NCBI RefSeq assembly: GCF_006345805.1
Contig: NW_021832828.1
Location: 82,276 to 146,275 of the forward strand
DNA: 64,000 bases
Direction of reading: 5' to 3'
Source of the DNA: Octopus sinensis
Taxonomy: Eukaryota
The position numbers and the translations under genes are program-made. The notes under the pieces are model-generated. The model ran no database searches, was not told the origin of the DNA, and worked only from the letters and a program-made list of their open reading frames with translations. Each line of letters opens with the position of its first letter. Positions within the stretch are counted from its first letter, which is position 1. Positions 10,199 to 44,400 of this stretch are shown here, in pieces.

Positions 10199-12055
10199 GC
10201 ACACACAATCAATCATACTGTAAATGTTGTGATGACTAATGTGTCAGTTTGGATTACTAATTAGCTTTTCCATTTAGTTAGCTGTCCTGACTCGTGTGTT
10301 GAGAACAGAAATTCTTAACTTAGGTGGGAGTGCTTCCGTGCGAGTGTTGTGTTCTCATAAAGGGTTGGTGAGTTTGTTATTTTACTTTGAAAAAAATAAT
10401 TTAATCAGATTCAGTCCATAGGTTTTAAATATATTTCCAAAAGCAATTTAAAAAAAATCCTTCTCAGGATTAGAATGAATTGAATATTGTGTTATGAGTT
10501 AGCAGAAGCATGATTGATGATGTAATGAGGTCCAATGTAATTTCATTATGTAAGTCCTCACATTTAGTAGTTTTCATAAGTTTAAAATAGGGGAAACTTA
10601 TCATCTATACAAATATCTAAAAAGAAAACCTGCCCACCACAATAATTGATATCCAAAAACCAAAGTGCCACATAAAAAGCACTGGTGATGGTGTCGTGTA
10701 AAAAGCACTGTAAAGTGGTTGGTGTTTGGAAGGGCATCCAGCTGTAGAAATCAAGCCAAAATACACTACGGAACTTGGTGCAACCCCTGTTCTTGCCAGT
10801 TATTGCTGAGCTGTGCAATCCATACCAGCATGGAAAACAGACATTAAATTTTGATGATCACGAAACACATGGTTGATTATATGGATAATAAACTATTGCT
10901 TGAAATAATTTCCATTTAATAAAAAAATTTTTTTAACCTGCAAAGAAAACATTTTAAAAATTTGTGAAACACTGATGAAAAGCAGCATTATGCTACAAAA
11001 AGTGATATTGTGTCTCAGAAGGTTAGGAAGCACTCATTTAGAAGTTCTGCTATAAATTGTTGCAAAAGTTGGCACACATAGTGTCTTTTGTTCTTCTGTA
11101 TATAATGATGAGAGTTTGGCAGGCCAACAGAGAACTTCAGATTTTGAATTTAGAGGTGAAAATTGGTTATAAGCAGCTGTAGTTATGAATTTCACTGTTC
11201 ATATATCTAGTGTGGATTTTCAGTTAAAGTGTTTTCATTTTGCTCCACATGTGGTTTGTAAGCATAGGTTATGTACAGTCTGTCTTGATGTCAAGATCAT
11301 TGTTTTTGCACTTCATAACAATTATTGATATTCTACAAAGCTTCAGTGATGTCCAGAACAGGGTTTTCCTGTCAAATCTGGACTGCTATTGTTGTCCACA
11401 CAGACCTCCTAGATAGGAGCCACCCAACTGATTGACATAAAATCCTTTACAAACATACTCCAACCTCTTGCTCACAGCCATGCTGTTTTCTCCCTCTGAC
11501 TTTTCTTTTACTACTATAATAGCCTCTGCTCCCACTGTTGACTGGGCTCATGACACCCATACTCAGGCATTCTTATCCTACTTTCCTTTGATCTTCTCCA
11601 TTGTTGTGTCTAACCTCACCATGATCCATACTAATCATTAAACTCATTCCTTTCTTCCCAGAATATTGACCCTTTGGAATTTCCTCCTGCTTGTGCCTAT
11701 CCCACAGAGCGACTTCTAGAGGGTCAAGAGAAACATTAATGGCATCAATTTTACTAGTTTAACCCTTTAGTCTTTAAACCAGCCACATCCTGTTTTATGT
11801 TCAAACTGACCAGCTCTGGCCTCTTACACTTATCCTACAATGTCATTTCAAAAATGAACAAACACTTCATCGAAATTTCAAAACTGAGATAATGCATGAT
11901 TAATTTTAAACAATGTGAATAAGAAAGTATTATATTTGACGAATTAATCTGAATGCTAATGGGTTAAGAGAACTTGTGAAGGCCATGGGCACTTTTCCAT
12001 CCTCCAGACTGAGCAAAAAAGAAAAAAAAAGTTGGGAAACTGAAAGAAGCCTGTC

Positions 12056-12094
<39 letters not shown>

Positions 12095-14722
12095 ACAATC
12101 AAGGAACGGCCATAATAGGCCATTCACCCACTAGAAATAACAGCCAAAGCTTCAACCGCAAATAAAAGTCAATTCCGTAAACAGGAGAAAATTTAAAAAA
12201 ACATTACCCTGTAATTTCTTATACGATGCACCGTTTCGTCTGCTGTTTAATGGTAAACTAACCTGATTAAATTAAATCAAGCCAATCTTCCATAGGCCCT
12301 CAGATTCTTCAGTAAGAAATAGCCACAAGTCGGAACAGATATTTTCACGAGGCATTTCCGACCCTGCCAAGTTATATCTGACCTAAAATTTTCAAATCAT
12401 CGCACTCGCGCCAAATTTATCGGCAGCAAATAAATATAAGCCGTCGATTCCATTACGGAATTAACCAGAAAATTCATAATTAATCAATATAGGGTGCCAG
12501 AAAAAATTTTGTAGAATTTTTTTGCCACCAGCGGCCTAGTGGGGAAAAGATTAAATAGTCATATACCATTTTTAAGTTCAACATCAACAATCAAGGAACG
12601 GCCATAATAGGCCATTCACCCACTAGAAATAACAGCCAAGCTTCAACCGCAAATAAAAGTCAATTCCGTAAACAGGAGAAAATTTAAAAAACATTTACCC
12701 TGTAATTTCTTATACGATGCACCGTTTCGTCTGCTGTTTAATGGTAAACTAACCTGATTAAATTAAATCAAGCCAATCTTCCATAGGCCCTCAGATTCTT
12801 CAGTAAGAAATAGCCAAGTCGGAACAGATATTTTCACGAGGCATTTCCGACCCTGCCAAGTTAATATCTGACCTAAAATTTTCAAATCATCGCACTAGCG
12901 CCAAATTTATCGGCAGCAAATAAATATAAGCCGTCGATTCCATTACGGAATTAACCAGAAAATTCATAATTAATCAATATAGGGTGCCAAAAAAAATTTT
13001 GCAGAATTTTTTTGCCACCAGCGGCCTAGTGGGAAAAAATTAAATAGTCATATACCATTTTTAAGTTCAACATCAACAATCAAGGAACGGCCATAATAGG
13101 CCATTCACCCACTAGAAATAACAGCCAAAGCTTCAACCGCAAATAAAAGTCAATTCCGTAAACAGGAGAAAATTTAAAAAAACATTACCCTGTAATTTCT
13201 TATACGATGCACCGTTTCGTCTGCTGTTTAATGGTAAACTAACCTGATTAAATTAAATCAAGCCAATCTTCCATAGGCCCTCAGATTCTTCAGTAAGAAA
13301 TAGCCACAAGTCGGAACAGATATTTTCACGAGGCATTTCCGACCCTGCCAAGTTAATATCTGACCTAAAATTTTCAAATCATCGCACTCGCGCCAAATTA
13401 TCGGCAGCAAATAAATATAAGCCGTCGATTCCATTACGGAATTAACCAGAAAATTCATAATTAATCAATATAGGGTGCCAAAAAAAATTTTGCAGAATTT
13501 TTTTGCCACCAGCGGCCTAGTGGGAAAAAATTAAATAGTCATATACCATTTTTAAGTTCAACATCAACAATCAAGGAACGGCCATAATAGGCCATTCACC
13601 CACTAGAAATAACAGCCAAAGCTTCAACCGCAAATAAAAGTCAATTCCGTAACAGGAGAAAATTTAAAAAACATTTACCCTGTAATTTCTTATACGATGC
13701 ACCGTTTCGTCTGCTGTTTAATGGTAAACTAACCTGATTAAATTAAATCAAGCCAATCTTCCATAGGCCCTCAGATTCTTCAGTAAGAAATAGCCACAAG
13801 TCGGAACAGATATTTTCACGAGGCATTTCCGACCCTGCCAAGTTAATATCTGACCTAAAATTTTCAAATCATCGCACTCGCGCCAAATTTATCGGCAGCA
13901 AATAAATATAAGCCGTCGATTCCATTACGGAATTAACCAGAAAATTCATAATTAATCAATATAGGGTGCCAAAAAAAATTTTGTAGAATTTTTTTGCCAC
14001 CAGCGGCCTAGTGGGAAAAAATTAAATAGTCATATACCATTTTTAAGTTCAACATCAACAATCAAGGAACGGCCATAATAGGCCATTCACCCACTAGAAA
14101 TAACAGCCAAAGCTTCAACCGCAAATAAAAGTCAATTCCGTAAACAGGAGAAAATTTAAAAAACATTTACCCTGTAATTTCTTATACGATGCACCGTTTC
14201 GTCTGCTGTTTAATGGTAAACTAACCTGATTAAATTAAATCAAGCCAATCTTCCATAGGCCCTCAGATTCTTCAGTAAGAAATAGCCACAAGTCGGAACA
14301 GATATTTTCACGAGGCATTTCCGACCCTGCCAAGTTAATATCTGACCTAAAATTTTCAAATCATCGCACTCGCGCCAAATTTATCGGCAGCAAATAAATA
14401 TAAGCCGTCGATTCCATTACGGAATTAACCAGAAAATTCATAATTAATCAATATAGGGTGCCAAAAAAAATTTTGCAGAATTTTTTTGCCACCAGCGGCC
14501 TAGTGGGAAAAAATTAAATAGTCATATACCATTTTTAAGTTCAACATCAACAATCAAGGAACGGCCATAATAGGCCATTCACCCACTAGAAATAACAGCC
14601 AAAGCTTCAACCGCAAATAAAAGTCAATTCCGTAAACAGGAGAAAATTTAAAAACATTTACCCTGTAATTTCTTATACGATGCACCGTTTCGTCTGCTAC
14701 TTACCACACAGCCACTCCTGCA

Positions 14723-14788
<66 letters not shown>

Positions 14789-17244
14789 TGCAGGAGTGGC
14801 TGTGTGGTAAGTAGCTTGCTTATCAACCACATGGTTCCGGGTCCAGTTCCACTGCGTGGCACCTTGGACAAATGTCTTCTACTATAGCATCGGGCTGACC
14901 AAAGCCTTGTGAGTGGATTTGGTAGACAGAAACTGAAAGAAGCCCATCGTATGTATATATATATATGTCTGTGTGTGTGTTTGAGTGTCTGTGTTTGTCC
15001 CCCCAACATCGCTTGACAACTGATGCTGGTGTGTTTACGTCCCCGTTACTTAGCAGTTCGGCTAGAGAGAGCAATAGAATAAGTACTAGACTTACAAAGA
15101 ATAAGTCTTGGGGGTCGATTTGCTTGACTAAAGGCTGTGCTCCAGCATGGCTGCAATCAAATGACTGAAACAAATTAAAGAATAAATATATGTGTGTGTG
15201 TGTCTATGTTTATTCCCCAGCCATTGCTTGACAACCGATGTCCCTGTAAGTTGGTGGTTTGGCAAAAGAGACCGATAGAATAAGTACTCGTCTTACAAAG
15301 AATGAGTCGATTTCTTTGACTAAAAACCCTTTGATGTTGTGCTCCAGCATGGCTGCGGTCAATGACTGAAACAAATAAAAGAGTAAAAGAAAGAATATTA
15401 AACAGCTCTGGCATATTCTATAATGACTACTTTCTTGCAGTAGAAAATATCTTTTATCTTTTACTTGATTCAGTGTTGGGACTATGGCGAAGCTAGTGCA
15501 CCACCTTAGAGAGTTTAGTTGAAATGGACATAAGCAAACCAGCAGCGGTTGTCAAGACAAACACACACACATGATCTTTTACTCTTTTACTTGTTTCAGT
15601 CATTTGACTGTGGCCATGCTAGAGTATTGCCTTAAGGGTTTTAGTCAAATAAATTGATTCCAGGACTTATTCTTTGTAAGCCTAATACTTTTTCTATTGG
15701 TCTCTTTTGCCAAACTGATAAGTTATGGGGACATAAACACACCGGCATTGGTTGTCAAGCGATGGTGGGAGGACAAACACAGGAACACACACATCACATA
15801 TATATACTAGCTGAATAGGCCGTTGTTGTTGGGCAGTTTTCACAAAATGTATATAAATTTTTGTTTATTCCATGTCAGACCATGCCTTCCCCAACAGATA
15901 GGCCTCTTGATCAGGACAGATTTGTGCAATATTTTGGGAAAAACTTTGTTTGCAATCTTTTTCCATTTTAAATTATTTACATGTTTGTTTGACCGTTTCA
16001 CATGAACTTATTCATTAAAAACTTATTAAAACTTCAGAAGTTCTTACAACTTTGGTTGTTATAATGCTTTGCTTTCGTTTGTTTAATAAAAGTTCCTCCT
16101 GGTAATGATTTTGCTTTCATTTTGTGATAGACAACTTTCATGCAGAAAACACCAGCTTCCAAATCCTGTTTTCTGATTAGGTAAAGTTAATTAAACTTTA
16201 AATCCCAGTAACATTTTCCTGGGACAAATAAATAACAAAATCGGAGTGGAAAATTTTTTCAATATACTAAATTTGAAAATTTTGATGTAATTCTAAAATT
16301 TCACAATGTGACAGCAACTGGGAAGACCCTACAAAATTAGAGAGACAGACTGTTACACGCATTGAAAATTGAAAGATGGATTTGAACATTTTTCTGAACC
16401 ATTAGAATCTTGAGATGATGTAAAATTCCATATAAGTAGTACTGAAGGTGCAATGTAAAGAAACAACACTGAATGTTTTTATATTCTTACATCTTTTAGT
16501 GTGAGTTGTGTGTTATTTTTCAATTTGTGTTAAGAATGAATCAGTTTTAGCTATGGAATAAAATGAATGACATTATCTATAGTTTTATTGTTTCAGTACA
16601 TTGGTAAAGTTCTAATAAATGTTAATATAGTGATATGAAAACAGATATATAAACACTTTACCTTTCACTCGTTAGTTTTACATCTGTTGTTGGACATATT
16701 GTAAAAGTTTTGATTGAGTGTACAATAGTTAATTCACTAAAATGCATGTGTTAACTGATAGGTAAAAAGTAAAGAACAAAGTATTAAAATTTGCTGTTCC
16801 CTTCATTAAACACCTTCTCCTGCTTTATCTTTGTTTCTCATTCTCCTCCCCTTCCCTGATATCAGCCACCCTCATTATGCCACCACATTTCCCTCAACCT
16901 AACACTCTTTGAGCCCTTCTCATTTTATTATATAATAGCCCAACCACTGTAGGGGGCCCATTATTGATTTTTATTGAAATCCATTTAGCCTACAATTGAA
17001 TTGGATGTTAGTTAAACATGTATGCAAAGTTTCGTGAAGACTGGTTCACTGGTATAGGCAGCAAGGTGGTATCAGACAGAAAGATAGAAATTTCCACTTA
17101 TATATAAGACATATGACAGTCTTCTTTCAGTTTCCATCTACCAAATGCACCCACAAGGCTTTGGTTGGTCTGATGCTATAGTAGAAGACACTTGCCCAAG
17201 GTGCCATGTGGTTGGGAAGCAAACTTCTAACCACACGGCCACGC

Positions 17245-17284
<40 letters not shown>

Positions 17285-19173
17285 GTAAATGTAAAAAAAT
17301 ACAAACTGGGACAAGAACGTGAAACATTTAGAAGACGATACAAAAAACACGGACGGGACATTCAAAGCCTTCAATCTTCAGTCAAGAACCGGATCATCTT
17401 CGCAATTTTGGCTGATTAATCTTGAGATTGTTCCAATCTGGCCAGCCCCAAAGGAAAATCTAAGCCAAGCGCATTAGATTCCTTGGAAGAAAGCCTCGAA
17501 TGTATACAAAACAAGGGCAGAAAACCGGACGATGTTACACGAATAAAAATATAAAAATACGTAAAAACAATAATGATAACATGAATAAGAATACAAAAAT
17601 ATGTAAAAACAATAATGATAATAATAATAACAACAAAAACAGGACGTCACAGACAAGTGTCTTTTCGACAGGACAAGTAAATTTTTGAGCTGGCGTTAGA
17701 AAAAAGCCTTAGGGCAAGAGAGAGAAAAAAAATGTGTCTTGCCACAACGGCTGCTGACCACGAAGAGGCTAGCAATCAGTGGCTAGTCACGTGTGAGGGA
17801 AAGAGAGAGGAAAAGAGGGACAGATGAAGAGAGAAAGAAGGGGAACAAGGAACAAAGGAGGAGGGGAATAGAGAGAGAGAGAGAAAGAGACAGATCAAAG
17901 TGGAGTGCAAAGTGTGAAAGGCAGAAAAATGTAGGAGAGGGAGGAAAGAGAGTGTTGTAGAGTCGTATATATGTATGTGTGTATGTATGTAAAATATGAA
18001 GGGCTTCTTTCAGTTTCTGCCTTTCAAATTCATTCCCATGGCTTTGGTCAGCCTTGGGCTATAGCAGAAGATATTCAAGGCGCTGCATAGTAGGTCTGAA
18101 CCCAGGATCACATGGTTGGGAAGCAAGTTTCATAAGCAGCCCACCCCTTGAGAAAGAGAAAGAAAAATAAATTACTAAAGAGGTAGTAGACTTGCAAAAC
18201 CTGTCTTTTTGGGGTTGTTTTCTATTAGTGAAAAAGCAAAGAAAAAAATTTAACATTCTTTGGGTAAATTGTTAAGTTGTTGAATGTTTCAACATTTTGA
18301 AGTGTAAACAGCTGAATATATAGTATATTTTAATAAAAATAGAATTACACACAAGCTAAACTTCCTTGAGCAGGTGAAAAGTTTTAATGGCTAAGGTAAA
18401 GACAGCCTGGTAGTGCAGGATGTAACAAGAATTTTTCACATTCCATCAATGGATAAAAATGTTTAATGGCTACATAAATGTGTGTGTATGTGTGTATATC
18501 TGTATAGGCACACACACACACATATATAAATAAATCCTCTCTACTATAGCCACAAGGCCTGAAATTTCAGGGGGTGGGGACTAGTCAATTATATCGACCT
18601 TACTATTTTATTTGTTTCATTCATTTGACTGCAGCCATGACCCCATGACTCATTCTTTGTAAGCCTAGTACTTATTCTATCGGTCTCTTGCCGAACCGCT
18701 AAGTTATAGGGATGTAAACATACCAGCATCGGTTGTCAAGCAATGGTGGTGGGGGCAAACACACACACACAACGGGCTTCTTTCAGTTTCCATCTACCAA
18801 ATCCACTCACAAGGCTTTGGTTGGCCCAAGGCTATAGTAGAAGACACTTGTCCAAGGTGCCATGCAGTTGGACTGAATCTGGAACCATGTGGTTGGTAAG
18901 CAAGCCACTTACCATACGGCCACTCCTGTGCCTATATCTGCATAAAAAGCATCCAGTACACTTTGTAAAATGGTTAGCATTGGGAAGGACATCCAGCCAT
19001 AGAAACCATGCCAAATCAGACAAACCATCATCCTCCTCATCATCATTTAACATTCGTTTTCCATGCTGGCAAGCCAGAGGGCTGCACTAGGTTCTATTTA
19101 TGCTTGGTTTCTACAACTGGATGCCTATCCCAATGCCAATCACATTGCAGATTGTACTAGGTGCTTTTTATGC

Positions 19174-19252: not shown

Positions 19253-22200
19253 AAAAGAGACCCCCTTTGGAAATGACTGACCATGGGATTGCACCTAGAA
19301 AGTTCCTCTCAGAGGAACAGGTTCCAGCTAGGTTGTTTATGGAAGACCAGCAGTTGCCCATGCATACCAGTCTTCCCTATCTACACCACCAATGTTATCC
19401 AAGAGAAAAGCAAAGGTTGATACAGCTTGGCACCAGTGACATTGCGACTCATTTCTGCAGTCAAGTGAACTGGAGCAACATGAAATAAAGTGTCTTGCTC
19501 AAGAACACAACACACAGCTCGATCTGCGAATTGAACTCACTACCTCATGATTGTGAGCCTGACACTCTAACCACCAAGCCATGTGCCTTCACTAATATAT
19601 ATATATATACACTCACATATACCACACACACACACGCACAAGTTCCTATACAGTGTCTCTGCATCAGTTCCAGTCACAAGGCATCAGTTGGTCTGAGGCA
19701 ATAACAGAAGACTTTTGCTCAGGATGTTGCACAGTGTCATTGAACCTGGAACCATGTAGCTGTGAGGCAAACTTCTTAACCAACCAACCAACCAGACACA
19801 TACACACACATGTGGCCATTAAACATTTTGATCCAGTTTTAACTTTTCACCTGTCCAGAAAGGTTTAGCTTGTGTGTAATTCTATTTTTATGAAAATATA
19901 CTATAAAGTTAATCAGGTACTTAAAGTTCAAAATGTACAGTGTGTATTGGGTGTTTTTTATGTGGCACCCAATACTTTCTTTTAAATGGTTGGTGTTAGG
20001 AAGGGTATATATATATGATATATTCGAATATATCAAGCCGTTGTTCGTACAGTACTTCTCTATGGCTGTGAAACGTGGCCTATGCGGGTGGTCGATCAAC
20101 GAAGGCTGGAAGTCTTCGACAATGACTGCCTCTGGTGCATTCTTCACTGCCGTCGGGTGGATGAAGTTCCCACCACCAATCTCCGACTTCGCCTGTCTCT
20201 ATGGCCTCTTCCATCTGTCCTTCTGCAACGGCACTTCCGGTGGTTTGGCCATGCATGTAGGCGTCCGGTGGGTGAACTGAGCCGTGATGTCCTTCTCCCG
20301 ACTCCACTTCCCAACTGGCGGAAATGCGCGGGCGGGCAGCTGAAGACCTGGGTTACGACGATCAAGGAGGACCTCTCTGTGCTCACGGGTCCGCAGGTGG
20401 TCAGCCTGCGCCGATGGAACCGTGACTGGCTTGCTATCTCCAGTGAACTGGTGCAGGACCGTCGTGTGTGGGCTGCCATGGTTTGAGATGCCTCGAGGGT
20501 GGTAGAAGAAGCCGACTCAACCCGCCCAGGGTGAATGTCGCCACAAGTACAAGTAGGAAGGGTATCTAGCCATAGAAAGGGTTATAACCCAAACTGTCCT
20601 CTAGAAGCACATCTGCTTATTCCAGTATTCCAAAATTTTATAAAGATGTTATATATGTGTGATGCATGCCAAGGGTTGAAAAATACTGAGCAATATTTTT
20701 CACAGAGTAATTACGTATCAAGACAAGAGCTTGGGAAAAAAAGTTTTGATATTATTTATTCGCCATTACACATGTTTCATTTGCTAATAGGTGTTACAAA
20801 ATTGTATATTTAGGAGAAACCTGCTAGATACCTCCTATTAGAAATTTTGCAGAGAATCAAATAATACACAATTTACGTTAGAATGAAGCTTTTATTTATA
20901 GTCAATAACTAGGAGTCCAGTAGACAGGAGGAGTGGAGAATTAGGAACAATACTATTAATATAAAAAGAGAATTGGAGATGAATGTAATAAGTGCACACA
21001 CATAAACATTCAAATTTAGATATATATATATATATATATCAAGTTAATCCAAACATGAAAACACAAAGAGGAAACACAACAATGCGAGGACGTGGAACAA
21101 GTATAGTATTATTGGACGCTCAGGAAAGAAGGAGCGTTTAATGTTTCGAGCGGAGCTCTTCATCAGAAACATAGGAAAAGGAAAGATCCAAAGAAGGGAA
21201 GATGGAGGAAAAAAAATTGCCAACGATACACACATGCACACACATTTGCAAATACACATACACACATACATATAAACTCATACATACACATATTTATGCA
21301 TGTATATATGTATGTATAAGTGAATGTATACGCGTGTGTATATATGTTCTGTTTTGATTATATATATGAACCAAGGATAGGACAGAAAGAACATGACAAA
21401 AACAACACACAGAAAAATAGACGATAACATAACAAACAGGAAACTGGACAAAACCAAGAAACATGGCCCATTCGCAGCATATTTCCTCATCAGTCAGAGT
21501 CTGGAAGATCTTCATGGTTTTGCACATTTTTATCCCTGAGACCACTTGAATCCAGCAAGTGCCAGAGCGTTAAGCTAAAAGCATTAAGCTTCTGGGGAAA
21601 GCAAGCGATTGTATACAAGAATGAAAACAAGAACAAGAAAGCAAGAATTATATGCATACAACAGACAAACGCCTTCTTGCTATACCACAAAATGAAAATA
21701 ATTGTACATTTACAAATGAATAAATAACAGAAAGTGTCTTTTGACTATTAGATGAACAAACATGATGAAATAATAATACAAGTGCAACAGAAAAGGAATT
21801 AGACATATAGAATGGACAAACGCCTTTTGGCTATAAATAACAAAATGAAAATTGTACAATTATGACATAAATAACAAAAAGGGATCTTTTGTCTATCAGA
21901 TGAATGTAGTAAGGATGGTGTGAAGGAGAAATGGGAGGTCTTAACAGACCAAGCAAGAGGATGGACAAACATGACTGCTGGTCAGAAAAGGGCGGACAGC
22001 AATCATGTGGTAGGAGAGGGTAAGAGTTGTAGAGGGCAGAGGGATTAAAGAATTAGAGGGAGGGGAGGAAAGAGGGACTAAGGAATAAGAGAGAGGGGAA
22101 AAGAGATCAAAGGGACTAAAGAATGAGAGGGAGGGGAAGAGAGAGAGAGAGAGAGAGAAAGGTATAAAGGAGACAACTGAAGAAGGAAAGCAGAGGGAGG

Positions 22201-23583: not shown

Positions 23584-23638
<55 letters not shown>

Positions 23639-25565
23639 GAGTGGCTGTGTGGTAAGTAGCATGTTTACCAACCACATGGTTCCGGGTTCAGTCCCACTGC
23701 GTGGCACCTTGGGCAAGTGTCTTCTACTATAGCTTCGGGCTGACCAAAGCCCTGTGAGTGGATTTGGTAGACGGAAACTGAAAGAAGCCCGTTGTATATA
23801 TGTATGTATATATATGTATGTGTGTGTGTGTCTGTGTTTGTCCCCCAACATCACTTAACAACCGATGCTGGTGTGTTTATGTCCCCGTTACTTAGCGGTT
23901 TGGCAAAGAGACCAATAGAATAAGTACTGGGCTTACAAAAGAATAAGACCCGGGGTCGAGTTGCTCGATTAAAGGCGGTGCTCCAGCATGGCCGCAGTCA
24001 AATGACTGAAACAAGTAAAAGAGTAAAACATGTGTTTGTGTGTGTGTTTATGTGTGTGTATATATATATATATATGTGTGTGTGTGTCTGTGCCCCACCA
24101 CTGTTTGACAACTGGTGTTGGTGTGTTTATGTCCCTGTGGTTCGGTAAAAGAAACCAATAGAATAAGTACTAGGCTTAATGGAAAAATAAGTCCTGGGAT
24201 TGATTCATTTTACAAAAAATTCTTCAAGGCAGTGCTCCAGCATGGCCATGGTCTAATGACTGAAGCAAGGTAAAAGGTTAAAAGATGATTGTAGACACCA
24301 GTATGGTCGTGTCGTTTAGCAGTTTGCATCACAACTGCATGGTACATGGTGCATGTATCTTCTACTGGACCTCTAGGCTAACTAATTGCTTTGTGAGTGA
24401 ATTTGTTTGCTGGAAAAGTGTGCAGGAGCCTTGTGAACGTGTGTGTGTGTATGTATGTGTCTTTGCATTGCTCTGTGTCACTCAACGACCAGTGTTGGTC
24501 TGTTGATGTTTCTCTTTTATAAAAAAAAATATAAAAAAATGAGGCTCACAGAATAAATACTAGAGTTGAAATAAGTACTGTGGTTGATTTGTTTGACTAA
24601 ATCCTTCAAGATGGAACTTCAGCTTGGCACATGCAGCCTTTAATGTCTGAAACAAGTAAAAAAAAAGAAATCAGATGTGTTTATGTATTTATTCATGGAT
24701 TAGCTCACAGGAAATGACATTACTCACTATCTCTATAGGCATTCTGAGACTTTTTAAGGATATAGTTTATGTTTAGTTGGACACTGGTCAGGTCGGTTTG
24801 GAAGAAGATGATTGGTGCTGTGGAGGGTGGAAGATAAGGGAGGTGACATAGTATAGGTGCTTAGAGGAGAAAACAGGTGTGAGCTTGAAGTAGAGAAAAT
24901 TTGAGAAGATGAAATATGATTTTTATCTAATATTTGATTAAGTAAAATAGTTACTGAAAGCTGGTGTGAAATTCTTAGAAAGCTGTTCCATTTTAATGAT
25001 GGAAGAAGCTGGCAGAATTGTTTGCACACTGGGCAAAATGCTTAGTGGTATTTTGTCTGTCTGTATGTTTTCAGTTCAAATTATGCTGCGGTCGACTTTG
25101 CCTTTCATCCTTTTGGGGTTGATGAAATAATTACCAGCTGATCACTGGGGTTGATGTAGTTGGCTTACTCCCTTCCCTGAAATTTCTAGCCTTTTGCCAA
25201 AATTTTAAACCAATTGTGGAAGGACACAGATATGTCTAAATTTCTTCTCACAGGCACCAAAGAATAGATTTCAAAGCATATAACCAATGGAGCCTGTCTG
25301 TAACCTGACTGCCCTAAAATATTTCCGTATTGCTTTGATGTAGTCTAAAAATATCTTAGTGTTTCTTCTTTGAAGCTATGAAGAATTGTTTCGCTCCAGT
25401 TGTTGTATAGCTTTTGTTATCTAACTTTATCTACAAGAGAAGGTGCCTCTCAGTCTAGCTGTTTATATTAAAACAGTCCACAAACATTATAATTTCTCTT
25501 TACTCATATCTGTCCCAATGTAAATGTGATGTTACATTTATATATATATATGCATTTGTGTATGA

Positions 25566-28600: not shown

Positions 28601-31600
28601 TCTTAACCTGTTGAGTGACTGTGGTCAGACCCACAAGTCTAAAGGATGGGGGTCAGATTGCATAGGTTCACTCACACTTTAACCTTTTAACATTTAAATC
28701 AGCCATATCTGTCCCAAATATTCTGTCTGTTTTATGTTGGAACTGGCTATATTTCAGTCTCTCACACCTACCATATAATGTCATTTTAAAAATAAATAAT
28801 TACATCATTGAAATTTCAACACAAAAGATAATGCAAATAAATAAGCATTTACATTGAACAAAATAATCCAAATGTTAAAGGGTTAAAACTACTAAGTGCA
28901 GGCAGGAAAACCTCTGCAGTATCAAGGATCAGTTTGCATAGCCACATGAAAGAGTGCCACTCTTTCATGTGGTCTTCAGTCATGATGAAATTGCCATCAT
29001 GTTTCTGTTTGTTACAATCTGTTTTGTTGTTGAGTATCAAAAATAGAGGCATTTTATCTGGTAGTGATGTGACCCTCTGAGTGTTCTCATTAAATTTGCT
29101 GAGTTAATTGCCCCAACATTATGTAATATCCGTTGTTAGTCTCACACCTGACAAAGAAAGAGGTGAAGGTTCAATTCTGGAGGGATGGCTGCTGATTATA
29201 CCAATTGTGCTGGTGTCACATAAAAAGCACCCAACACAGTCTGTAAAACGGTTGGTGTTAGGAAGGGCATCCAGCTGTAGAAACCAAGCCAAAACAGACT
29301 AAAGAACCTGGCGTGGACCCAGCTATTTAACCCATGTCAGCATGGAAAATGGATGTTAAATGCCAATGAATGATGATGATGTAATCTTTCTATTTTTGGC
29401 ACCAGGCTAACAATTTTGAGGGTAAGGCGCAAGTCAATTACATTGACCATTCCCACTTCCCTGGACAATTGACTGGTACTTAATTTTTTTTGACTCCATA
29501 AAGATGAAAGGCAAAGTTCTCTGTGGCAGTATTTGAAATCAACTATAAAGAGCTGGAAGAAATGAAGCATTTTGTTCGACATGCAAACAGTTCTACCAAC
29601 TTGTTAACTGACAGTAAAACACAAGCAAGTATTTGACAACTTCTCATCCTTCCTTGAGAGTATATTACCTTGAACATACACATCTTGAATATTCAAGAGA
29701 CATCTTTAGGTCTAGTTATTGTGGCTTTGCAAGGACAAGTTTTTTTTATTTCTATCTGTAAAATACACGTGAAAAGTTTATGAAAAATTCACGTTGTTTC
29801 TGATGTAATTTTGTTTATGGCAACTGTCAGAAATTTTGGTTAGATTGTTGGAACTCTGCATTTCTGAAATTCCATCCCTGAAACACAAATATGCCACATT
29901 TTTATATATATATATATTAAACTGAATTTTGAAGCTAGTTTTAGGGTAGCTACTGGACATGACTGACAGATTTATTGTAAAGTTTGTGTCGACTGAGACT
30001 TTACTATAAGAAAAAGTGTACATATGTGTATGTGTGTGTATTTATATATATATATACTGGACACTTCTGACAACTGGACGCTTCTAAGGGACAACCTGCT
30101 GAAAGCTACTGACCAGATCTGTGGCTGGTGCAAAGTCCCCTCAAGACCCAAAATAACATGGTGGTGGAACAATATTGTTGACAGGGCTATTAGACAAAAG
30201 AAACAGGCTTGGAAGGACTGGAAGAACGGTGGTAGCAGGGAAGTGTATCAGACTGCCAGAAGGGAAGCTAGGAGGCAGGTGTATTTAGCCAGAGGGGAAG
30301 CAGATAAGAAAAAACTTGCCAATGTTCTGCGCTGTGAGGATGAAAGACTTGAGGTATTTCGTGTTGCAAGACAGTGTGTGAGAGAGAATCATGACGTGGT
30401 AGGAGAGAAATGTGTTCGCAAGGATGTCGGTTCACTTGCGCTAAATGAGGATGCAAAGAGAGAGGTTTGGAGACGCCACTATGAAAGGTTGCTGAATGAG
30501 GAAAATGAATGGGATAAAGAGAGTCTGCCGAATGTCGACCCAACAGAGGGACCAGCAATCCGAGTTAACAGTTCCTTAGTAGTTAAGGCAATTACAAGCA
30601 TGAAAACAGGGAAAGCCCCAGGCCCATCAGGAATTACTGCAGAGATGCTCAAAATATCTGGTAGTGTCGGCTATAGCCTAGTCACCCGTATAGTTAACCA
30701 GGTGATACACGAAGGAGTCATACCCAATGACTGGTGTAGCAGCATAATAGTCAACTGCTACAAAGGTAAAGGTGACGCCCTAGATACAAATAATTACAGG
30801 GGTATCAAGCTGCTGGATCAGGTAATGAAGGTTACGGAGAGGGTTATAGCCCAACTAATTAGAGAGAGAGTTAGCTTAGACGAGATGCAGTTTGGGTTCG
30901 TGCCAGGGAAAAGTACTACTGATGCTATATTCCTGGTAAGACAGCTGCAGGAGAAATACCTAGCCAAAGATAAGCCCCTGTACCTGGCTTTTGTTGACAT
31001 GGAGAAAGCCTTCGACAGGGTCCCCCAATCCCTTATCTGGTGGTCAATGAGGAAACTAGGGATAGATGAATGGTTAGTGAGAGCTGTGTGAGCCATGTAC
31101 AGAGACGCTGCTAGTAAGGTGAGGGTTGGCAACGAGTACAGTGAAGAATTCCGGGTAGAGGTTGGCGTCCACCAAGGTTCAGTCCTCAGTCCCCTCCTAT
31201 TTATCATAGTCCTCCAGGCAATAACGGAGGAATTCAAGACAAGATGCCCCTGGGAGCTCCTCTATGCTGATGACCTTGCTCTAATTGCTGAGTCACTATC
31301 AGAACTGGAGAAGTTTCAGGTGTGGAATCAAGGTTTAGAATCGAAGGGCCTTAGAATCAACCTAGCCAAAACCAAAGTCCTAATAAGTAGGAAGGTAGAC
31401 CAATCACAAACGCCTTCAGGTAGATGGCCCTGCTCGATCTGTAAATAAGGCGTAGGTAGAAACTCTATAAGGTGCACCAAGTGTAAGCTATGGACACATA
31501 AGAGGTGTAGCAATGTCAAAGGAAGGCTAACTAGGAAAATAGTTTTTGTCTGTGGCAGATACTCAGGAGCAATAAACACTGAAAATGTGCAGAGACCAAC

Positions 31601-33283
31601 TTCTACCACGTTCCAGGGAGAAAAACTAGAAGTAGTTGATAGCTTCCGCTACCTAGGTGACCAAGTCAGTAGTGGGGGTGGGTGTGCTGAAAGTGTAACT
31701 GCTAGAGTAAGGATAGCCTGGGCAAAGTTTAGAGAGCTCTTACCCCTGCTGGTGACAAAAGGCCTCTCGCTCAGAGTAAAAGGCAGACTGTATGATGCAT
31801 GTGTACGTACAGCCATGCTACATGGTAGTGAAACATGGGCTGTGACTGCTGAGGATATGCGTAAGCTCGCAAGAAATGAAGCCAGTATGCTCCGATGGAT
31901 GTGTAATGTCAGTGTTCATAATCGACAGAGTGTAAATACCTTGAGAGAAAAGTTGGACCTAAGAAGCATCAGTTTTGGTGTGCAAGAGAGACGTTTGCGC
32001 TGGTATGGTCATGTGACGAGAATAGCTGAAGATAGTTGTGTGCAAAAGTGCCACACCCTAGCAGTTGACGGAACCTGTGGACGAGGTGGTGAAGCACGAC
32101 CTTCGAACTCTAGATCTCACCAGAGAAATGACTAGAGACCGAGACCTATGGAAGTATGCTGTGCACGAGAAGACCCGGCAAGACTAGTGAGACCATAACC
32201 CGTGGCCTCTACCTGGTATGTAGCCAGTTGACTTATACATACCTTTCCTTCTTGGGACACAAAACTCCACTTGTGAAGACCCGTTGAGGCAAGTGAAAAT
32301 CAAAATCGAAATCAAACAAATCAAATCAGATATCAGAAAGCAGAACCAAAATCGAAGTCGATCAACATCAATGGAAATTGCAGCTGTGATACCAGTGCCG
32401 GTGACAAGTAAGCGAACCATCCGATTGTGGCCGTTGCCAGCTCCGCCCCGACTGGCCTCCGTGCCAGTGGCATGTAAAAAGCACCATCCGTTTGTAGCCG
32501 TTGCCAGCCTCGCCTGGCCCCCGTGCCGGTGGCACGTAAAAAGCACCATTCGTTCGTGGCCGTTGCCAGCCCCGCCTGGCCCCCGTGCCGGTGGCACGTA
32601 AAAAGCACCATCCAATCATGGCTGTTGCCAGCCTCGCCTGGCCCCCGTGCCGGTGGCACGTAAAAAGCACCATCCGTCCGTGGCCGTTTGCCAGCTCCGT
32701 CTGGCACCTGTGCGGGCAGCACGTAAAAAGCACCCACTACACTCACGGAGTGGTTGGCGTTAGGAAGGGCATCCAGCCATAGAAACACTGCCAGATCAGA
32801 CTGGGCCTGATGCAGCCTTCTGGCTTCACAGACCCCAGTTGAACCGTCCAACCCATGCTAGCATGGAAAGCGGACGCTAAATGATGATGATGATGATATA
32901 GTAATATGTAAAGGTAAGATTCAAGGATCAATGTGTAGGAAATTAGTAAGCTTCAAGCAGTTTGTACAAAGTATAAAAAAATAACTTTCAGGAACAATAA
33001 TGGTTTATTGACGTAGAAGGTTGTAAATTTTTTCCCATATTGGAGTTTGATAAGCTGAAAAAAATTAATTTTATAGTTTACGGTTAGCAACTGGGGTTGC
33101 TGTGTATGCAAATAAAAATCCAAAATTTGGGAATGGAGTAGATAAAATCCAGGCTACATATGTTTCATAGCTAGCAGAACCTTGAAAGTAGTTATTACCC
33201 AAACAATGGGTAATCCACTAGCTGCTCATCGAGCCAAAGATATATATCATGGGTAGAAGTTATGAAGTGACTCAAGGGTTGAG

Positions 33284-41433: not shown

Positions 41434-44400
41434 AGATACACATGCGTGCATGATTACATGTATGTTTGTGTCTGCTTCTCTTGACATGATGTGATAGTTG
41501 TAAATGAATGTTATTGTTACAGAAGTGCTATCAGTTGATTGGTTGTTTCCAGTCTTCCGAGAAGGCATGTCCTGGAATGGAATGAAAACAGGTGAGTTTT
41601 AGTGACAAGAAGGGCATCTGGTTGTAGAACATGTATGTATCTCAATAAATTTTGTCTTGCCAGTGCAAGCTTGGAAAGGAGGACATTAAAAGAAAACAAT
41701 TGTATGTGTGTACATAGATATACACATGCATAAAAATACAGGGGTTGGACAAAATAATTGGAACATGTGTTAAATTTAATGAATATTTATTTAATACAGA
41801 GTTGGTCCTCTTTTAGCTTTCTGAACAGCTTCATTGGATCTAGGAATTGATTCATACAACTTCCTGACTTCATTGAGAGGCATCTTGAGCCATTCTTCCT
41901 GCAAAACCTGCTCCAGTTATTGTAGACACAATAGTGGAGGGTAACGACTTCTAACTTGTCACCCCAAGATGCACCACAGATGCTCAATAATATTAAGATC
42001 TGGAGATTGAGTGGAGGGAGGGGGGCACTCCATGTGTTGTAGCTCACTACTATGCTCTTCATACCGATTCTTAACCACATAAGAAGTGTGTATTGGAGCA
42101 TTGTCATCTTGGAAGCTGCACTCACCATCAGGGAATATGGGAAGGACTTGATTTCCCAAAATATTCAGATAATCATTTCTGTTGATCCTACCATGCGGGG
42201 GCACGATTGGACCAAGAGAATTTCAAGAAATGTTTAACAAAAATATACCGTAGTATTTTGACAGCACACTGAAAATAACAAATTCAATGGGTACTATTCA
42301 AAGGAAATTAGTAGTAAGACTTGCATCACATTGAAAATGTGGAGGAAGTATAGGAACCTAAGAACATGTGATGTTAGTGATGTTTGTAATAAATAAGGTA
42401 ACATGAAAGAAATATTAGCTTCAAATTTTGACACAAGGCCAGCAATTTCAGGGGAGGAGCACAGTCGATTACATTGACCCCAGTGCTCAACTTGTACCTA
42501 TTTTATCGAGCCCGAAAGGTTGAAAAGCATAGTCGACCCTGGCAGAATTTGAACTCAGAATGTAAGGATGGATGAAATGCTGCTAAGCATTATGCCTGGT
42601 GTGCTAATGGCTCTGCCAGCTTGCCATCTTGAATAAAAGAAATATTGGAATTATATACTCAGGAGTGGCTGTGTGGTAGGTAGCTTGCTTACCAACCACA
42701 TGGTTCTGGGTTCAGTCCCACTGCGTGGCACTTTGGGCAAGTGTCTTCTACTATAGCCTCAGGCCAACCAAAGCCTTGTGAGTGGATTTGGTAGACGGAA
42801 ACTGAAGGAAGCCCGTCGTATATATGTATATGTATATACGTGTTTGTGTGTCTGTGTTTGTCCCCCAACATTGCTTGACAACCGTGCTGGTGTGTTTATG
42901 TCCCCGTAACTTAGCGGTTTGGTAAAAGATACCGATAGAATAAGTACTAGGCTTACAAAGAATAATTTCCGGGGTCGATTTGCTCGACTAAAGGCAGTGC
43001 TCCAGCATGGCCGCAGTCAAATGACTGAAACAAGTAAAAGAGTAAAGAGAGAGTATACCACACACACACACAGTTGCAGACATGACCATGTTGTTATAAG
43101 TTTGTTTCCCATCCACATGACTTCAGGTTCAGTCTCACTATGTGGCACCTTGGTCAAGTGTCTTCTTTATTCCTGGATTGACCAAATCCTTGTAAGTGAA
43201 TTTGATAGAAAGAAACTGAAAGCACATCGTATATTTTTTTGAAGCTCATCATATATATTTCGATGCATATTTGTGTGTATCTTTGCATTTCCAACATCAT
43301 CTTGTGTTTGCTTATTAATTGTAAACAATGGCCTTGCTAACTGTGTCATTTGTTTGCTGTAGGCTGTGAAAACGTGCGGGTTTCTTGACATGTTGCATGA
43401 TTTTTCTAAACAGAAGGTTCATCCACACAGTTTCATGTTTCCAGTTCGCCATGTTGGCACATCTGGGTTGATAGCTGTTCAGTAAACTGGGAGATTATTA
43501 CCCTACTAATGAGGTCACCTTGTAACTTACAATGAGCCCCTGTGAAGGAGATGGAGTGGATGATTTAAGCAAGGTGTTTAGAGGTTCAAATATGATGGCA
43601 GGGAGTAAGAACATGCTTATTGTTTGTGGAGAAGATTCATGGTTACTTTTGTATTTTACATGGGTGGATGGGGAAGATTGGAAGGGGGCTAATTTTTATC
43701 AATAATATTGTTTTCTGTTATCACATATCTAATGTTACATTTGGTTTTGTAATAGAATGTATATTTTTATCTATTTACAAACATGGACTCTTTTGTGTTG
43801 ATTCACCATTTGAGGAGTCCAGAGCTATACAATAAAGCTGTAGTTCCTAACCTTTTACAGGCTTCGCCTCCTTGACAACCAGACCACACTCCTAGTGCCA
43901 TCTCCTCTCACTACCACAAACATAGACCACTTTTATGGTGGCGAGCTAGCAGAAACATTAGCACACCGGGCGAAATGCTTAGTGGTATTTCGTCTGCCGT
44001 TACGTTCTGAGTTCAAATTCTGCCAAGGTCGACTTTGCCTTTCATCCTTTCGGGATCGATTAATTTAAGTATCAGTTACACACTGGGGTCGATATAATCA
44101 ACTTAATTCCTTTGTCTGTCCTTGTTTGTCCCCTCTATGTTTAGCCCCTTGTGGGCAAAAAAAAATTTTTTTAAATCACTTTCTGCAGCAAATTTAAAAA
44201 CAGTATTTCACAAATAAAACTTAACCTAATTAACACATTATTATTTTTTTTATTAAAAAATAAAATTTTTTTTACCATGCATTGCTCCCTTTTGGCCACC
44301 CTTTTATTGCCTACTTTTCTTCAGCACCCACACTGGATCTTTCCACTGTCCCCAAGGGGGCAGTATCACCCACTTTGGAAGCCACTGAAATTACATAGGC

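What the first reader, a model, noticed from the sequence alone, without database searches (positions are those of the whole stretch)
12091..14698. Octopus retrozyme: a 5.3-copy ~491-bp tandem array with a complete type I hammerhead ribozyme in every unit
Seen: five full and one partial minus-strand hammerheads with perfect 8-bp stem I (AUUUCUUA/UAAGAAAU), CUGAAGA and GAAA core, stem III ACGG-UGCA-UCGU and a GUA cleavage triplet. Predicted cut sites are spaced 490-492 nt, so a read-through transcript would release monomers. Established: tandem hammerhead repeats in animals (newt satellite 2, schistosome SM-alpha, cricket pDo500, and coral, mussel and axolotl retrozymes) are non-autonomous retroelements that yield abundant circular RNAs. 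Inference: a ~491-nt circRNA-producing retrozyme. I know of no description in cephalopods, but I cannot search the literature.
Basis: partly seen in the sequence, partly recalled or inferred. Interest (0 to 1): 0.95.

Follow-up and report, generated by a model that had tools for sequence, protein, structure and literature searches.

The report
Tandem hammerhead-ribozyme repeat (retrozyme) in octopus-like DNA
A 2.6-kb array of 491-bp repeats carries one hammerhead self-cleaving RNA motif per repeat, the layout of the 'retrozyme' mobile elements known in many animals, but the motif has an unusual helix II, standard RNA-family models miss it, and its activity is untested.

Summary
Window 12091-14698 is a 5.3-copy, 98%-identical tandem array with a 490-492 bp period. 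Its minus strand carries five identical 107-nt type I hammerhead-like motifs plus one 3' fragment. Predicted cut sites are 491, 492, 490, 490 and 491 nt apart.

The core, an 8-bp helix I, a 4-bp helix III with a palindromic UGCA loop, and a GUA cleavage triplet are all present. My descriptor found no such motif in 51 Mb of shuffled sequence.

- Helix II is 68 nt long and opens with an A.C mismatch where hammerheads almost always have G10.1-C11.1.
- Rfam reports no hammerhead family match, even at E<=10 on a 151-nt slice.

The anatomy fits a metazoan non-LTR retrozyme: a non-coding, low-GC, structured monomer, bounded by (TA)n on both sides, with array ends that are not at the cut site. I could not retrieve any other copy, so covariation, copy number, expression and cleavage remain untested.

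Retrozymes are already known in molluscs (mussel), and 235 Hammerhead_1 hits were reported in the giant squid genome. This is therefore a new member of a known kind with an atypical ribozyme. Octopod origin rests only on a SINE-derived ORF matching Octopus vulgaris.

The parts
12091..14698 (-). Tandem array: 23 nt (unit positions 470-492), then 5 full units of 490-492 nt, then 131 nt (unit positions 1-131). Numbering runs from the predicted cleavage site.
14177..14283 (-). Hammerhead motif 1 (107 nt): helix I 5' strand AUUUCUUA, CUGAAGA, 68-nt helix II, GAA, helix III ACGG-UGCA-UCGU, A17, helix I 3' strand UAAGAAAU. Cut predicted after + 14185. A 3-nt bulge (GCU) and a 6-bp closing stem extend helix I to 14171-14292.
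13685..13791 (-). Hammerhead motif 2, identical to motif 1. Cut predicted after + 13693.
13195..13301 (-). Hammerhead motif 3, identical to motif 1. Cut predicted after + 13203.
12705..12811 (-). Hammerhead motif 4, identical to motif 1. Cut predicted after + 12713. This unit lacks 2 nt (TG) in the closing stem just 5' of helix I.
12214..12320 (-). Hammerhead motif 5, identical to motif 1. Cut predicted after + 12222.
14668..14698 (-). Partial motif at the 5' end of the array on the minus strand: the end of helix II 3' strand, GAAA, helix III, GUA and the helix I 3' strand. It has no CUGAAGA, so it cannot fold alone. Nominal cut after + 14676.
12056..12092 (.). (AT)n microsatellite abutting the array end. 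It follows a ~30-nt SINE/LINE tail fragment at 12036-12068.
14696..14724 (-). A 29-nt exact inverted copy of the head of the neighbouring tRNA-type SINE. It overlaps the array end by 3 nt (GCT) and is the left arm of a perfect 120-nt palindrome, 14696-14815.
14725..14786 (.). (TA)31 microsatellite on the other side of the array, followed by a full SINE copy at 14787-14960 (+).

Best explanation
This is a non-LTR retrozyme-type element: a non-coding ~491-bp unit, repeated head to tail, whose minus-strand transcript carries one type I hammerhead per unit.

Proposed mechanism; every step is inferred:
1. Read-through transcription of the minus strand. This is probably by Pol II, because each unit has seven T4-T8 runs that would stop Pol III.
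2. Each hammerhead folds as helix I (8 bp, a GCU bulge, then a 6-bp closing stem), helix II (a 68-nt extended hairpin) and helix III (4 bp with a UGCA loop). It cuts after GUA.
3. Helix III is barely stable alone, and together with its palindromic loop it can form a 12-bp intermolecular duplex. Neighbouring units may therefore cut as double hammerheads, as in newt and axolotl repeats.
4. Double cleavage releases 490-492-nt linear monomers with 5'-OH and 2',3'-cyclic phosphate ends.
5. An RtcB-type tRNA ligase circularises the monomers.
6. A Penelope-like element's reverse transcriptase and endonuclease copy the circle, or an uncleaved multimer, into a more-than-unit-length cDNA and insert it into a (TA)n tract.

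Shown here: the array, the motif, the in-phase cut sites, the folds and the flanks. Not shown: transcription, cleavage, circles and mobility. The A.C mismatch at 10.1/11.1 makes catalytic efficiency uncertain.
For: - Array and in-phase motifs are present.
- The full catalytic core, A15.1-U16.1 and a GUA site are present, and all three helices can form. The hammerhead-constrained fold is -33.5 kcal/mol against an MFE of -34.3.
- The descriptor hits only the array in the window and nothing in 51.2 Mb of shuffles.
- Helix III alone is -0.2 kcal/mol; the 12-bp dimer duplex is -17.5. A short helix III with a palindromic loop is the stated hallmark of metazoan type I hammerheads (PMC4209133; PMC7229834).
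- There is no ORF over 66 aa and that ORF has no protein homologue.
- GC is 36%, and the circular monomer folds to -131 kcal/mol, z = -3.8.
- Unit length and copy number lie within published ranges: 51-972 bp, with 75% of families having at most 7 units. Cricket pDo500 repeats are 463-505 bp.
- Both array ends abut (TA)n, which covers only 1.3% of the window. PLEs insert preferentially into microsatellites (PMC8557442).
- The array starts at unit position 470 and ends at 131, not at the cut site. This is expected for cDNA made from a circle or a multimer.
- All 15 variable alignment columns among the units lie outside the 107-nt hammerhead. This is only marginal, P about 0.03-0.05.
- A mismatch at the base of helix II occurs in the axolotl HHR_Amex2 hammerhead, which still self-cleaves.
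Against: - No Rfam hammerhead family matches at gathering score, at E<=10 over 3.2 kb, or at E<=10 over a 151-nt slice.
- Position 10.1/11.1 is A.C, although G10.1-C11.1 is described as highly conserved.
- Helix II is 68 nt, against a typical 4 bp plus a loop.
- The known loop 1-loop 2 contact nucleotides cannot be recognised.
- Only about 5% of the predicted ensemble is hammerhead-compatible.
- Only one locus is available and its five motifs are identical, so there is no covariation evidence.
- No relatives turned up in any searchable collection.
- The window contains no PLE coding sequence.
- Low GC does not discriminate, because the whole window is 37.6% GC.
Confidence: 0.65

Rival explanations
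1. A dead or crippled retrozyme relic. The array descends from a hammerhead retrozyme, but a G10.1-to-A change happened before the array was amplified. The motif no longer cleaves efficiently, and the array now behaves as an ordinary young satellite, expanded at the DNA level or copied from an uncleaved multimeric transcript.
For: - One transition (A back to G) would restore a canonical G10.1-C11.1 pair.
- All Rfam hammerhead models miss the motif.
- All five copies share the change.
- The array ends do not coincide with cleavage sites, which also fits an uncleaved multimeric template.
- The hammerhead is not significantly better conserved than the rest of the unit, P about 0.03-0.05.
Against: - The units are 98-99.8% identical, so the array is young.
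- Every other core position and all three helices are intact in all copies.
- The axolotl HHR_Amex2 hammerhead, with a U.U mismatch at the base of helix II, still self-cleaves (22% in one hour as a monomer) and cleaves much more efficiently in dimeric constructs.
- An A.C pair can form a protonated wobble (my own knowledge, not tested here).
Confidence: 0.2
2. An ordinary satellite or tandem duplication whose unit resembles a hammerhead by chance.
For: - There is only one independent occurrence.
- Rfam finds no hammerhead.
- Helix II is atypical.
- My back-of-envelope estimate is about 1e-10 to 1e-9 per position. A genome of several Gb could therefore hold roughly one to ten chance matches somewhere.
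Against: - There were no hits in 51.2 Mb of shuffled sequence, which gives a 95% upper bound of about 6e-5 for one 492-nt unit on both strands.
- The motif sits in the repeat class, polarity and phase that define retrozymes.
- It has a palindromic helix III loop and a bulged, closed helix I, features my descriptor did not ask for.
- The array lies in a (TA)n tract.
Confidence: 0.07
3. The repeats are the terminal repeats (pLTRs) or tandem debris of an autonomous Penelope-like element, not a separate non-autonomous element.
For: - PLE pLTRs carry type I hammerheads and PLEs insert in partial tandems, often into microsatellites.
- Non-LTR retrozymes are reported to be related to PLE pLTRs.
- A PLE-style minimal hammerhead-like motif lies 6.4 kb away, at 21135-21172.
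Against: - There is no reverse-transcriptase or GIY-YIG reading frame inside or next to the array. The longest stop-free stretches within 6 kb are SINE-derived or low-complexity.
- The only RT in the window is a LINE relic 15 kb away.
- Five uninterrupted 491-bp units are not the ORF-flanking arrangement of a PLE.
- PLE hammerheads are minimal variants with little or no helix III; this one has a 4-bp helix III.
Confidence: 0.03

Closest known systems
Metazoan non-LTR retrozymes (coral, mussel and axolotl; Cervera & de la Pena 2020, PMC7229834)
   Same: Head-to-tail repeats of a few hundred bp with one type I hammerhead per unit in a single polarity. Non-coding, low GC, no LTR, and a structured monomer.
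   Different: The 491-bp unit is above the 150-450 bp range given in that paper, though inside the 51-972 bp range of the 2026 preprint. Helix II is 68 nt with an A.C at its base. Expression as circular RNA is not shown here. Only one array is known.
Cave-cricket pDo500 satellite (PMC2837043)
   Same: A ~500-bp (463-505 bp) tandem unit with one embedded hammerhead. Both single- and double-hammerhead cleavage modes have been proposed.
   Different: The pDo500 hammerhead is a compact 49-nt motif with documented in vitro cleavage and compensatory changes across 12 species. None of that is available here.
Newt satellite 2 / axolotl HHR_Amex1 and HHR_Amex2
   Same: A weak helix III capped by a palindromic tetraloop, which favours cleavage as dimers in multimeric transcripts. 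HHR_Amex2 also has a mismatch at the base of helix II.
   Different: The amphibian helix III is 1-2 bp, here it is 4 bp. Amphibian helix II is short and keeps recognisable loop-loop contacts. Amphibian units are 330-350 bp and present in 10^4-10^5 copies.
Penelope-like element minimal hammerheads (Cervera & de la Pena 2014, PMC4209133)
   Same: Type I topology, a longer-than-usual helix II, a palindromic helix III region and association with microsatellite targets.
   Different: PLE motifs keep G10.1-C11.1 and usually have an extra nucleotide after A9. They lack a real helix III and flank an RT/GIY-YIG reading frame. None of this applies to the array.
Plant LTR retrozymes (PMC4918200)
   Same: Non-autonomous hammerhead-bearing retroelements proposed to move through circular RNA.
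   Different: The plant elements have type III hammerheads inside LTRs, a PBS and PPT, GC above 55%, 4-bp target duplications and a dimeric rather than multimeric arrangement.

Membership tests
Hammerhead ribozyme, type I | Conserved core strand C3-U4-G5-A6-N7-G8-A9 | tested here: met
   CUGAAGA is present in all five motifs.
Hammerhead ribozyme, type I | G12-A13-A14 followed by an A15.1-U16.1 pair, with cleavage-site H17 not G | tested here: met
   GAA-ACGG..UCGU-A gives the triplet GUA.
Hammerhead ribozyme, type I | Three helices around the core, with helix I open and helices II and III closed | tested here: met
   Helix I is 8 bp, plus a bulge and a 6-bp closing stem. Helix II is a closed 68-nt hairpin. 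Helix III is 4 bp with a tetraloop. The constrained fold is -33.5 against an MFE of -34.3 kcal/mol.
Hammerhead ribozyme, type I | G10.1-C11.1 pair at the base of helix II | tested here: not met
   This position is an A.C mismatch, followed by UCUG/CAGA. The pair is described as highly conserved. A U.U mismatch at the same place occurs in an axolotl hammerhead that still self-cleaves.
Hammerhead ribozyme, type I | Typical helix sizes (I about 6 bp, II about 4 bp) and loop 1-loop 2 tertiary contacts | tested here: inconclusive
   Helix I has a GCU bulge after 8 bp. Helix II has an internal loop after its A.C mismatch and the 4 bp that follow, then a long extension. The geometry is plausible, but the known contact nucleotides cannot be recognised. 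Mussel hammerheads also lack them.
Hammerhead ribozyme, type I | Match to the Rfam hammerhead covariance models (Hammerhead_1 and related) | tested here: not met
   No hammerhead family is reported at gathering score, at E<=10 on 3.2 kb, or at E<=10 on 151 nt. The likely cause is the roughly 58-nt insertion in helix II plus the 10.1 mismatch, but I could not test that.
Hammerhead ribozyme, type I | Covariation in the helices among homologues | not testable with these tools
   The five copies are identical. No relatives were found, and no eukaryotic genome collection is searchable by DNA.
Hammerhead ribozyme, type I | Site-specific self-cleavage | not testable with these tools
   This needs in vitro transcription.
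Metazoan non-LTR retrozyme | [quoted passage not shown] | tested here: met
   The array has 5.3 copies of 491 bp. Published ranges are 150-450 bp and 51-972 bp.
Metazoan non-LTR retrozyme | One type I hammerhead per unit, all in the same polarity | tested here: met
   No motif occurs on the plus strand.
Metazoan non-LTR retrozyme | No LTRs and no coding capacity (non-autonomous) | tested here: met
   ORFs are at most 66 aa and that ORF has no homologue. The only direct repeats are the units themselves. PBS and PPT were not searched separately.
Metazoan non-LTR retrozyme | Low GC (below 45-50%) | tested here: met
   The unit is 36.2% GC. This does not discriminate, because the window is 37.6% GC.
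Metazoan non-LTR retrozyme | Monomer predicted to form a stable, highly self-paired circle | tested here: inconclusive
   The circular MFE is -131.3 kcal/mol, z = -3.8 against shuffles, with 58% of bases paired. The opposite strand gives z = -3.4. The monomer is more structured than chance but not rod-like.
Metazoan non-LTR retrozyme | Many dispersed genomic copies and co-existence with Penelope-like elements | not testable with these tools
   There is one array in 64 kb. The only hint of PLEs is a minimal-hammerhead-like motif at 21135-21172.
Metazoan non-LTR retrozyme | Expression as linear and circular monomer RNA | not testable with these tools
   No transcriptome data are reachable by nucleotide search.
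Penelope-like element (autonomous) | RT plus GIY-YIG endonuclease reading frame between the repeats | tested here: not met
   No such frame lies in or within 6 kb of the array. The only RVT_1 hit is a LINE relic at 30024-31448.

The most novel reading that the evidence does not exclude
The genomic A at position 10.1 sits opposite C11.1 at the foot of a long, largely double-stranded helix II. An A.C mismatch in double-stranded RNA with a 5' A neighbour is the context that ADAR enzymes prefer, and coleoid cephalopods edit RNA on a very large scale (both points are my own knowledge). Inosine at 10.1 would pair with C11.1 and restore the canonical purine-C pair. The hammerhead, and with it circular RNA production, might therefore be switched on by A-to-I editing. 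A more modest version is that this is an active hammerhead subclass with a 68-nt helix II domain that family models miss, so cephalopod retrozymes are systematically under-annotated. Nothing here tests either idea.
Probability: 0.06. Interest if true: 0.85.

Novelty: new member of a known kind. Interest (0 to 1): 0.35.

Why it matters
If active, this would extend hammerhead retrozymes and their abundant small circular RNAs to octopods. I found no description of them there in the searchable literature. It would also give a natural hammerhead with a greatly extended helix II and a non-canonical 10.1/11.1 pair. Standard covariance-model annotation misses this motif, so retrozyme and ribozyme counts from Rfam-based genome annotation may be too low. 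It does not change the general picture: retrozymes are already described from cnidarians to amphibians, including a mollusc.

Tried and rejected
- **Rfam.** I ran it on the whole window at gathering score, on 11800-15000 at E<=10, and on a 151-nt slice around one motif. No hammerhead or other ribozyme family appeared. The only 'hits' are microRNA models matching the (TA)31 palindrome, which are artefacts.
- **Protein route to other copies.** The 66-aa ORF of the array has no homologue in the 5.8-billion-protein collection.
- **DNA pattern scans.** I scanned for the core plus helix III and for helix I plus the core.
- **Sequence strings in papers.** Searching for pieces of the unit and of the SINE returned nothing.
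- **Species identification through the LINE reverse transcriptase.** Best hits are only 55-64% identical and mostly unnamed. The named ones are Elysia chlorotica and Argonauta hians, and the source contigs are ENA assemblies whose records name no organism. The window's own RT product is not on record. A SINE-derived ORF did hit an Octopus vulgaris protein.
- **Pfam on six-frame translations of the flanks.** I listed stop-free stretches instead.
- **ARAGORN.** It finds no tRNA in the window, so the tRNA-like SINE head is too diverged to be called.
- **Alternative registers for helix II or a second core** (for example CUGAGGG). I rejected these by inspection, because A9 would be lost.
- **G in place of A at 10.1.** Substituting it in the folding model did not change which fold wins, so that calculation says nothing about activity.
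Full report
**1. The observation**

Tandem Repeats Finder reports one long-period array in the window: 12091-14698, period 491, 5.3 copies, 98% matches. I read the minus strand and located the landmarks by script.

- The helix I 5' strand plus first core box (AUUUCUUA-CUGAAGA) occurs five times.
- The second core box with helix III, the cleavage triplet and the helix I 3' strand (GAAACGGUGCAUCGUA|UAAGAAAU) occurs six times.
- Predicted cuts fall after + coordinates 14676, 14185, 13693, 13203, 12713 and 12222. Their spacing is 491, 492, 490, 490, 491.
- The five complete motifs are 107 nt and identical. The sixth, at the array's minus-strand 5' edge, has only the 3' half.

**2. Is it more than chance?**

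I wrote a type I hammerhead descriptor: helix I >=5 bp, CUGANGA, helix II >=4 bp and up to 90 nt, GAAA, helix III >=3 bp closed by A-U, and H17 not G.

- It hits only the five array motifs in the window, and nothing on the plus strand.
- It hits nothing in 400 dinucleotide-preserving shuffles of the window on both strands, 51.2 Mb in total.
- That bounds the chance of such a motif in one 492-nt unit at about 6e-5 (95% upper limit).

The five copies are one independent event. Across a multi-gigabase genome a few chance matches are conceivable. The argument therefore rests on the motif sitting in the repeat class, polarity and phase that are characteristic of hammerhead repeats.

**3.

- **Helix I** is 8 perfect base pairs. 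In the multimer or circle it continues, after a 3-nt GCU bulge on the 5' strand, into a 6-bp closing stem (CUUGUG/UACAGG). This gives the bulged, closed helix I typical of type I motifs.
- **Helix III** is ACGG/UCGU (one G.U) with a palindromic UGCA loop. As a hairpin it is worth only -0.2 kcal/mol. Two copies can form a 12-bp duplex worth -17.5 kcal/mol. This is the double-hammerhead arrangement described for newt, axolotl and PLE hammerheads.
- **Helix II** is 68 nt. It starts with an A.C mismatch at 10.1/11.1, then UCUG/CAGA, an internal loop, AUGG/CCAU, and a 14-bp hairpin. Canonical metazoan motifs have a helix II of about 4 bp and a highly conserved G10.1-C11.1 pair.
- **Rfam** reports no hammerhead family. 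This holds at gathering score on the window, at E<=10 on 3.2 kb, and at E<=10 on a 151-nt slice. The long insertion and the mismatch plausibly explain this, but I could not test that, because custom sequences cannot be given to the Rfam scan.
- **Competing folds.** The hammerhead-compatible fold (-33.5 kcal/mol) is within 1 kcal/mol of the MFE (-34.3). It makes up about 5% of the predicted ensemble.
- **Precedent for the mismatch.** The axolotl HHR_Amex2 hammerhead has a U.U mismatch at the base of helix II. It still self-cleaves, 22% in one hour as a monomer and much more efficiently in dimeric constructs.

**4. The unit and the array**

- The 492-nt consensus is 36.2% GC. As a circle it folds to -131.3 kcal/mol, z = -3.8 against shuffles, with 58% of bases paired. 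The opposite strand gives z = -3.4.
- The longest ORF is 66 aa and has no homologue.
- Units are 98.8-99.8% identical to the consensus. The 15 variable alignment columns are mostly homopolymer-length changes. All lie outside the 107-nt hammerhead, which is only marginally non-random, P about 0.03-0.05.
- The hammerhead strand has seven T4-T8 runs per unit. Pol III read-through of multimers is therefore unlikely.
- The unit occurs nowhere else in the 64 kb.

**5. Flanks and insertion site**

- On the minus strand the array begins at unit position 470, inside the helix II 3' strand. It ends at unit position 131. Neither end is at the cleavage site.
- The 3' end runs into an (AT)n tract that follows a ~30-nt SINE/LINE tail fragment.
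- The 5' end overlaps by 3 nt (GCT) a 29-nt exact inverted copy of the head of the neighbouring SINE. Then come (TA)31 and the SINE itself, which together form a perfect 120-nt palindrome at 14696-14815.
- (TA)n tracts of at least 8 repeats cover only 1.3% of the window. Lying between two such tracts therefore suggests targeted insertion.
- Penelope-like elements show this microsatellite bias, which obscures target duplications (PMC8557442).
- Ends at arbitrary unit positions fit a more-than-unit-length cDNA made from a circular or multimeric RNA, as proposed for PLEs and retrozymes.
- The inverted 29-mer with junction microhomology looks like a template switch at the 5' junction. That is my inference only.

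**6. Surroundings**

- There is no RT or GIY-YIG reading frame within 6 kb of the array.
- A degraded LINE reverse transcriptase lies at 30024-32135.
- A tRNA-type SINE occurs in about 18 copies or fragments.
- A second hammerhead-core motif lies on the minus strand at 21135-21172: AUGUUU-CUGAUGA-A-GAGCUCCGCUC-GAA-ACAU-U-AAACG.
  - It has the extra nucleotide after A9 and the G10.1-C11.1 pair described for PLE minimal hammerheads.
  - Its ACAU is one CpG-to-CpA step from the palindromic ACGU.
  - The relaxed descriptor that found it gives 0.01 hits per shuffled window. Rfam does not see it either.
  - It may be a relic of a PLE terminal repeat, which hints that the presumed autonomous partner family exists in this genome.

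**7. Organism**

The window could not be placed directly.

- The LINE RT's best hits are 55-64% identical. The few named ones are molluscs, Elysia chlorotica and Argonauta hians.
- A SINE-derived ORF matches a 'Hypothetical predicted protein [Octopus vulgaris]' at 51% identity over 99% of the query, E = 1e-25.
- From my own knowledge the SINE resembles the abundant tRNA-derived SINEs of octopus genomes.

An octopod origin is likely but not proven.

**8. Comparison with what is known**

Cervera & de la Pena (2020) define metazoan non-LTR retrozymes by these features:
- low GC;
- one type I hammerhead per unit;
- no LTR, PBS or PPT;
- expression as linear and circular monomers, ligated by RtcB;
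- likely mobilisation by co-resident PLEs.

A 2026 preprint reports unit lengths of 51-972 bp, at most seven units in 75% of families, and sequence relatedness to PLE terminal repeats. Cricket pDo500 repeats are 463-505 bp. The array meets every structural criterion I could test. The criteria I could not test are copy number, PLE relatedness, expression and cleavage.

For cephalopods I found no retrozyme description. The giant squid genome paper does list 235 Hammerhead_1 hits. Retrozymes are documented in a mollusc, the mussel, and reported 'from molluscs to arthropods'.

**9. Verdict**

- Retrozyme-type element with an atypical type I hammerhead: about 0.65.
- Same origin, but crippled by the 10.1 change: about 0.2.
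- Chance motif in an ordinary satellite: about 0.07.
- Part of an autonomous PLE: about 0.03.

This is a new member of a known kind. It is moderately interesting for its hammerhead variant and for being invisible to Rfam.

The most novel reading still open is that A-to-I editing of A10.1 restores the canonical pair and gates cleavage. This is speculative, at about 0.06.

Noticed in passing
window 21135-21172 (minus strand): A second hammerhead-core motif of the Penelope-like 'minimal' type: CUGAUGA, an extra A, a G-C-closed 4-bp helix II, GAA, ACAU and a 5-bp helix I. The relaxed descriptor gives 0.01 hits per shuffled window. Rfam does not detect it. It lies about 100 nt from a (TA)10 tract. 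It may be a relic of a PLE terminal repeat or a solo retrozyme monomer.
   Followed up: partly
window 14696-14815: A perfect 120-nt palindrome: a 29-nt inverted copy of the SINE head, (TA)31, then the SINE head. It shares 3 nt (GCT) with the end of the hammerhead array. It may record a template switch at the insertion's 5' junction, or a hairpin-mediated rearrangement. Rfam microRNA models match it spuriously.
   Followed up: partly
window 14787-14960 (+) and about 18 other sites (for example 23636-23805, 42660-42829, 18765-18928): An abundant tRNA-type SINE family, often directly preceded by a (TA)n tract. ARAGORN does not call its head as a tRNA. An ORF that runs across one copy matches an Octopus vulgaris predicted protein, which is the only taxon evidence I obtained.
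   Followed up: partly
window 30024-32135 (+): A degraded non-LTR (LINE) reverse transcriptase split over three reading frames (RVT_1). Its best database relatives are 55-64% identical and include gastropod and argonaut proteins.
   Followed up: partly
window 32445-32734: A GC-rich 62-bp tandem repeat (4.7 copies, 87% matches) immediately downstream of the LINE relic, in contrast to the AT-rich surroundings.
   Followed up: no
window 12036-12068 (+): A ~30-nt fragment matching only the 3' tail of the SINE, preceded by an A-rich tract and followed by the (AT)n that borders the array. It looks like a severely 5'-truncated SINE or LINE insertion.
   Followed up: no
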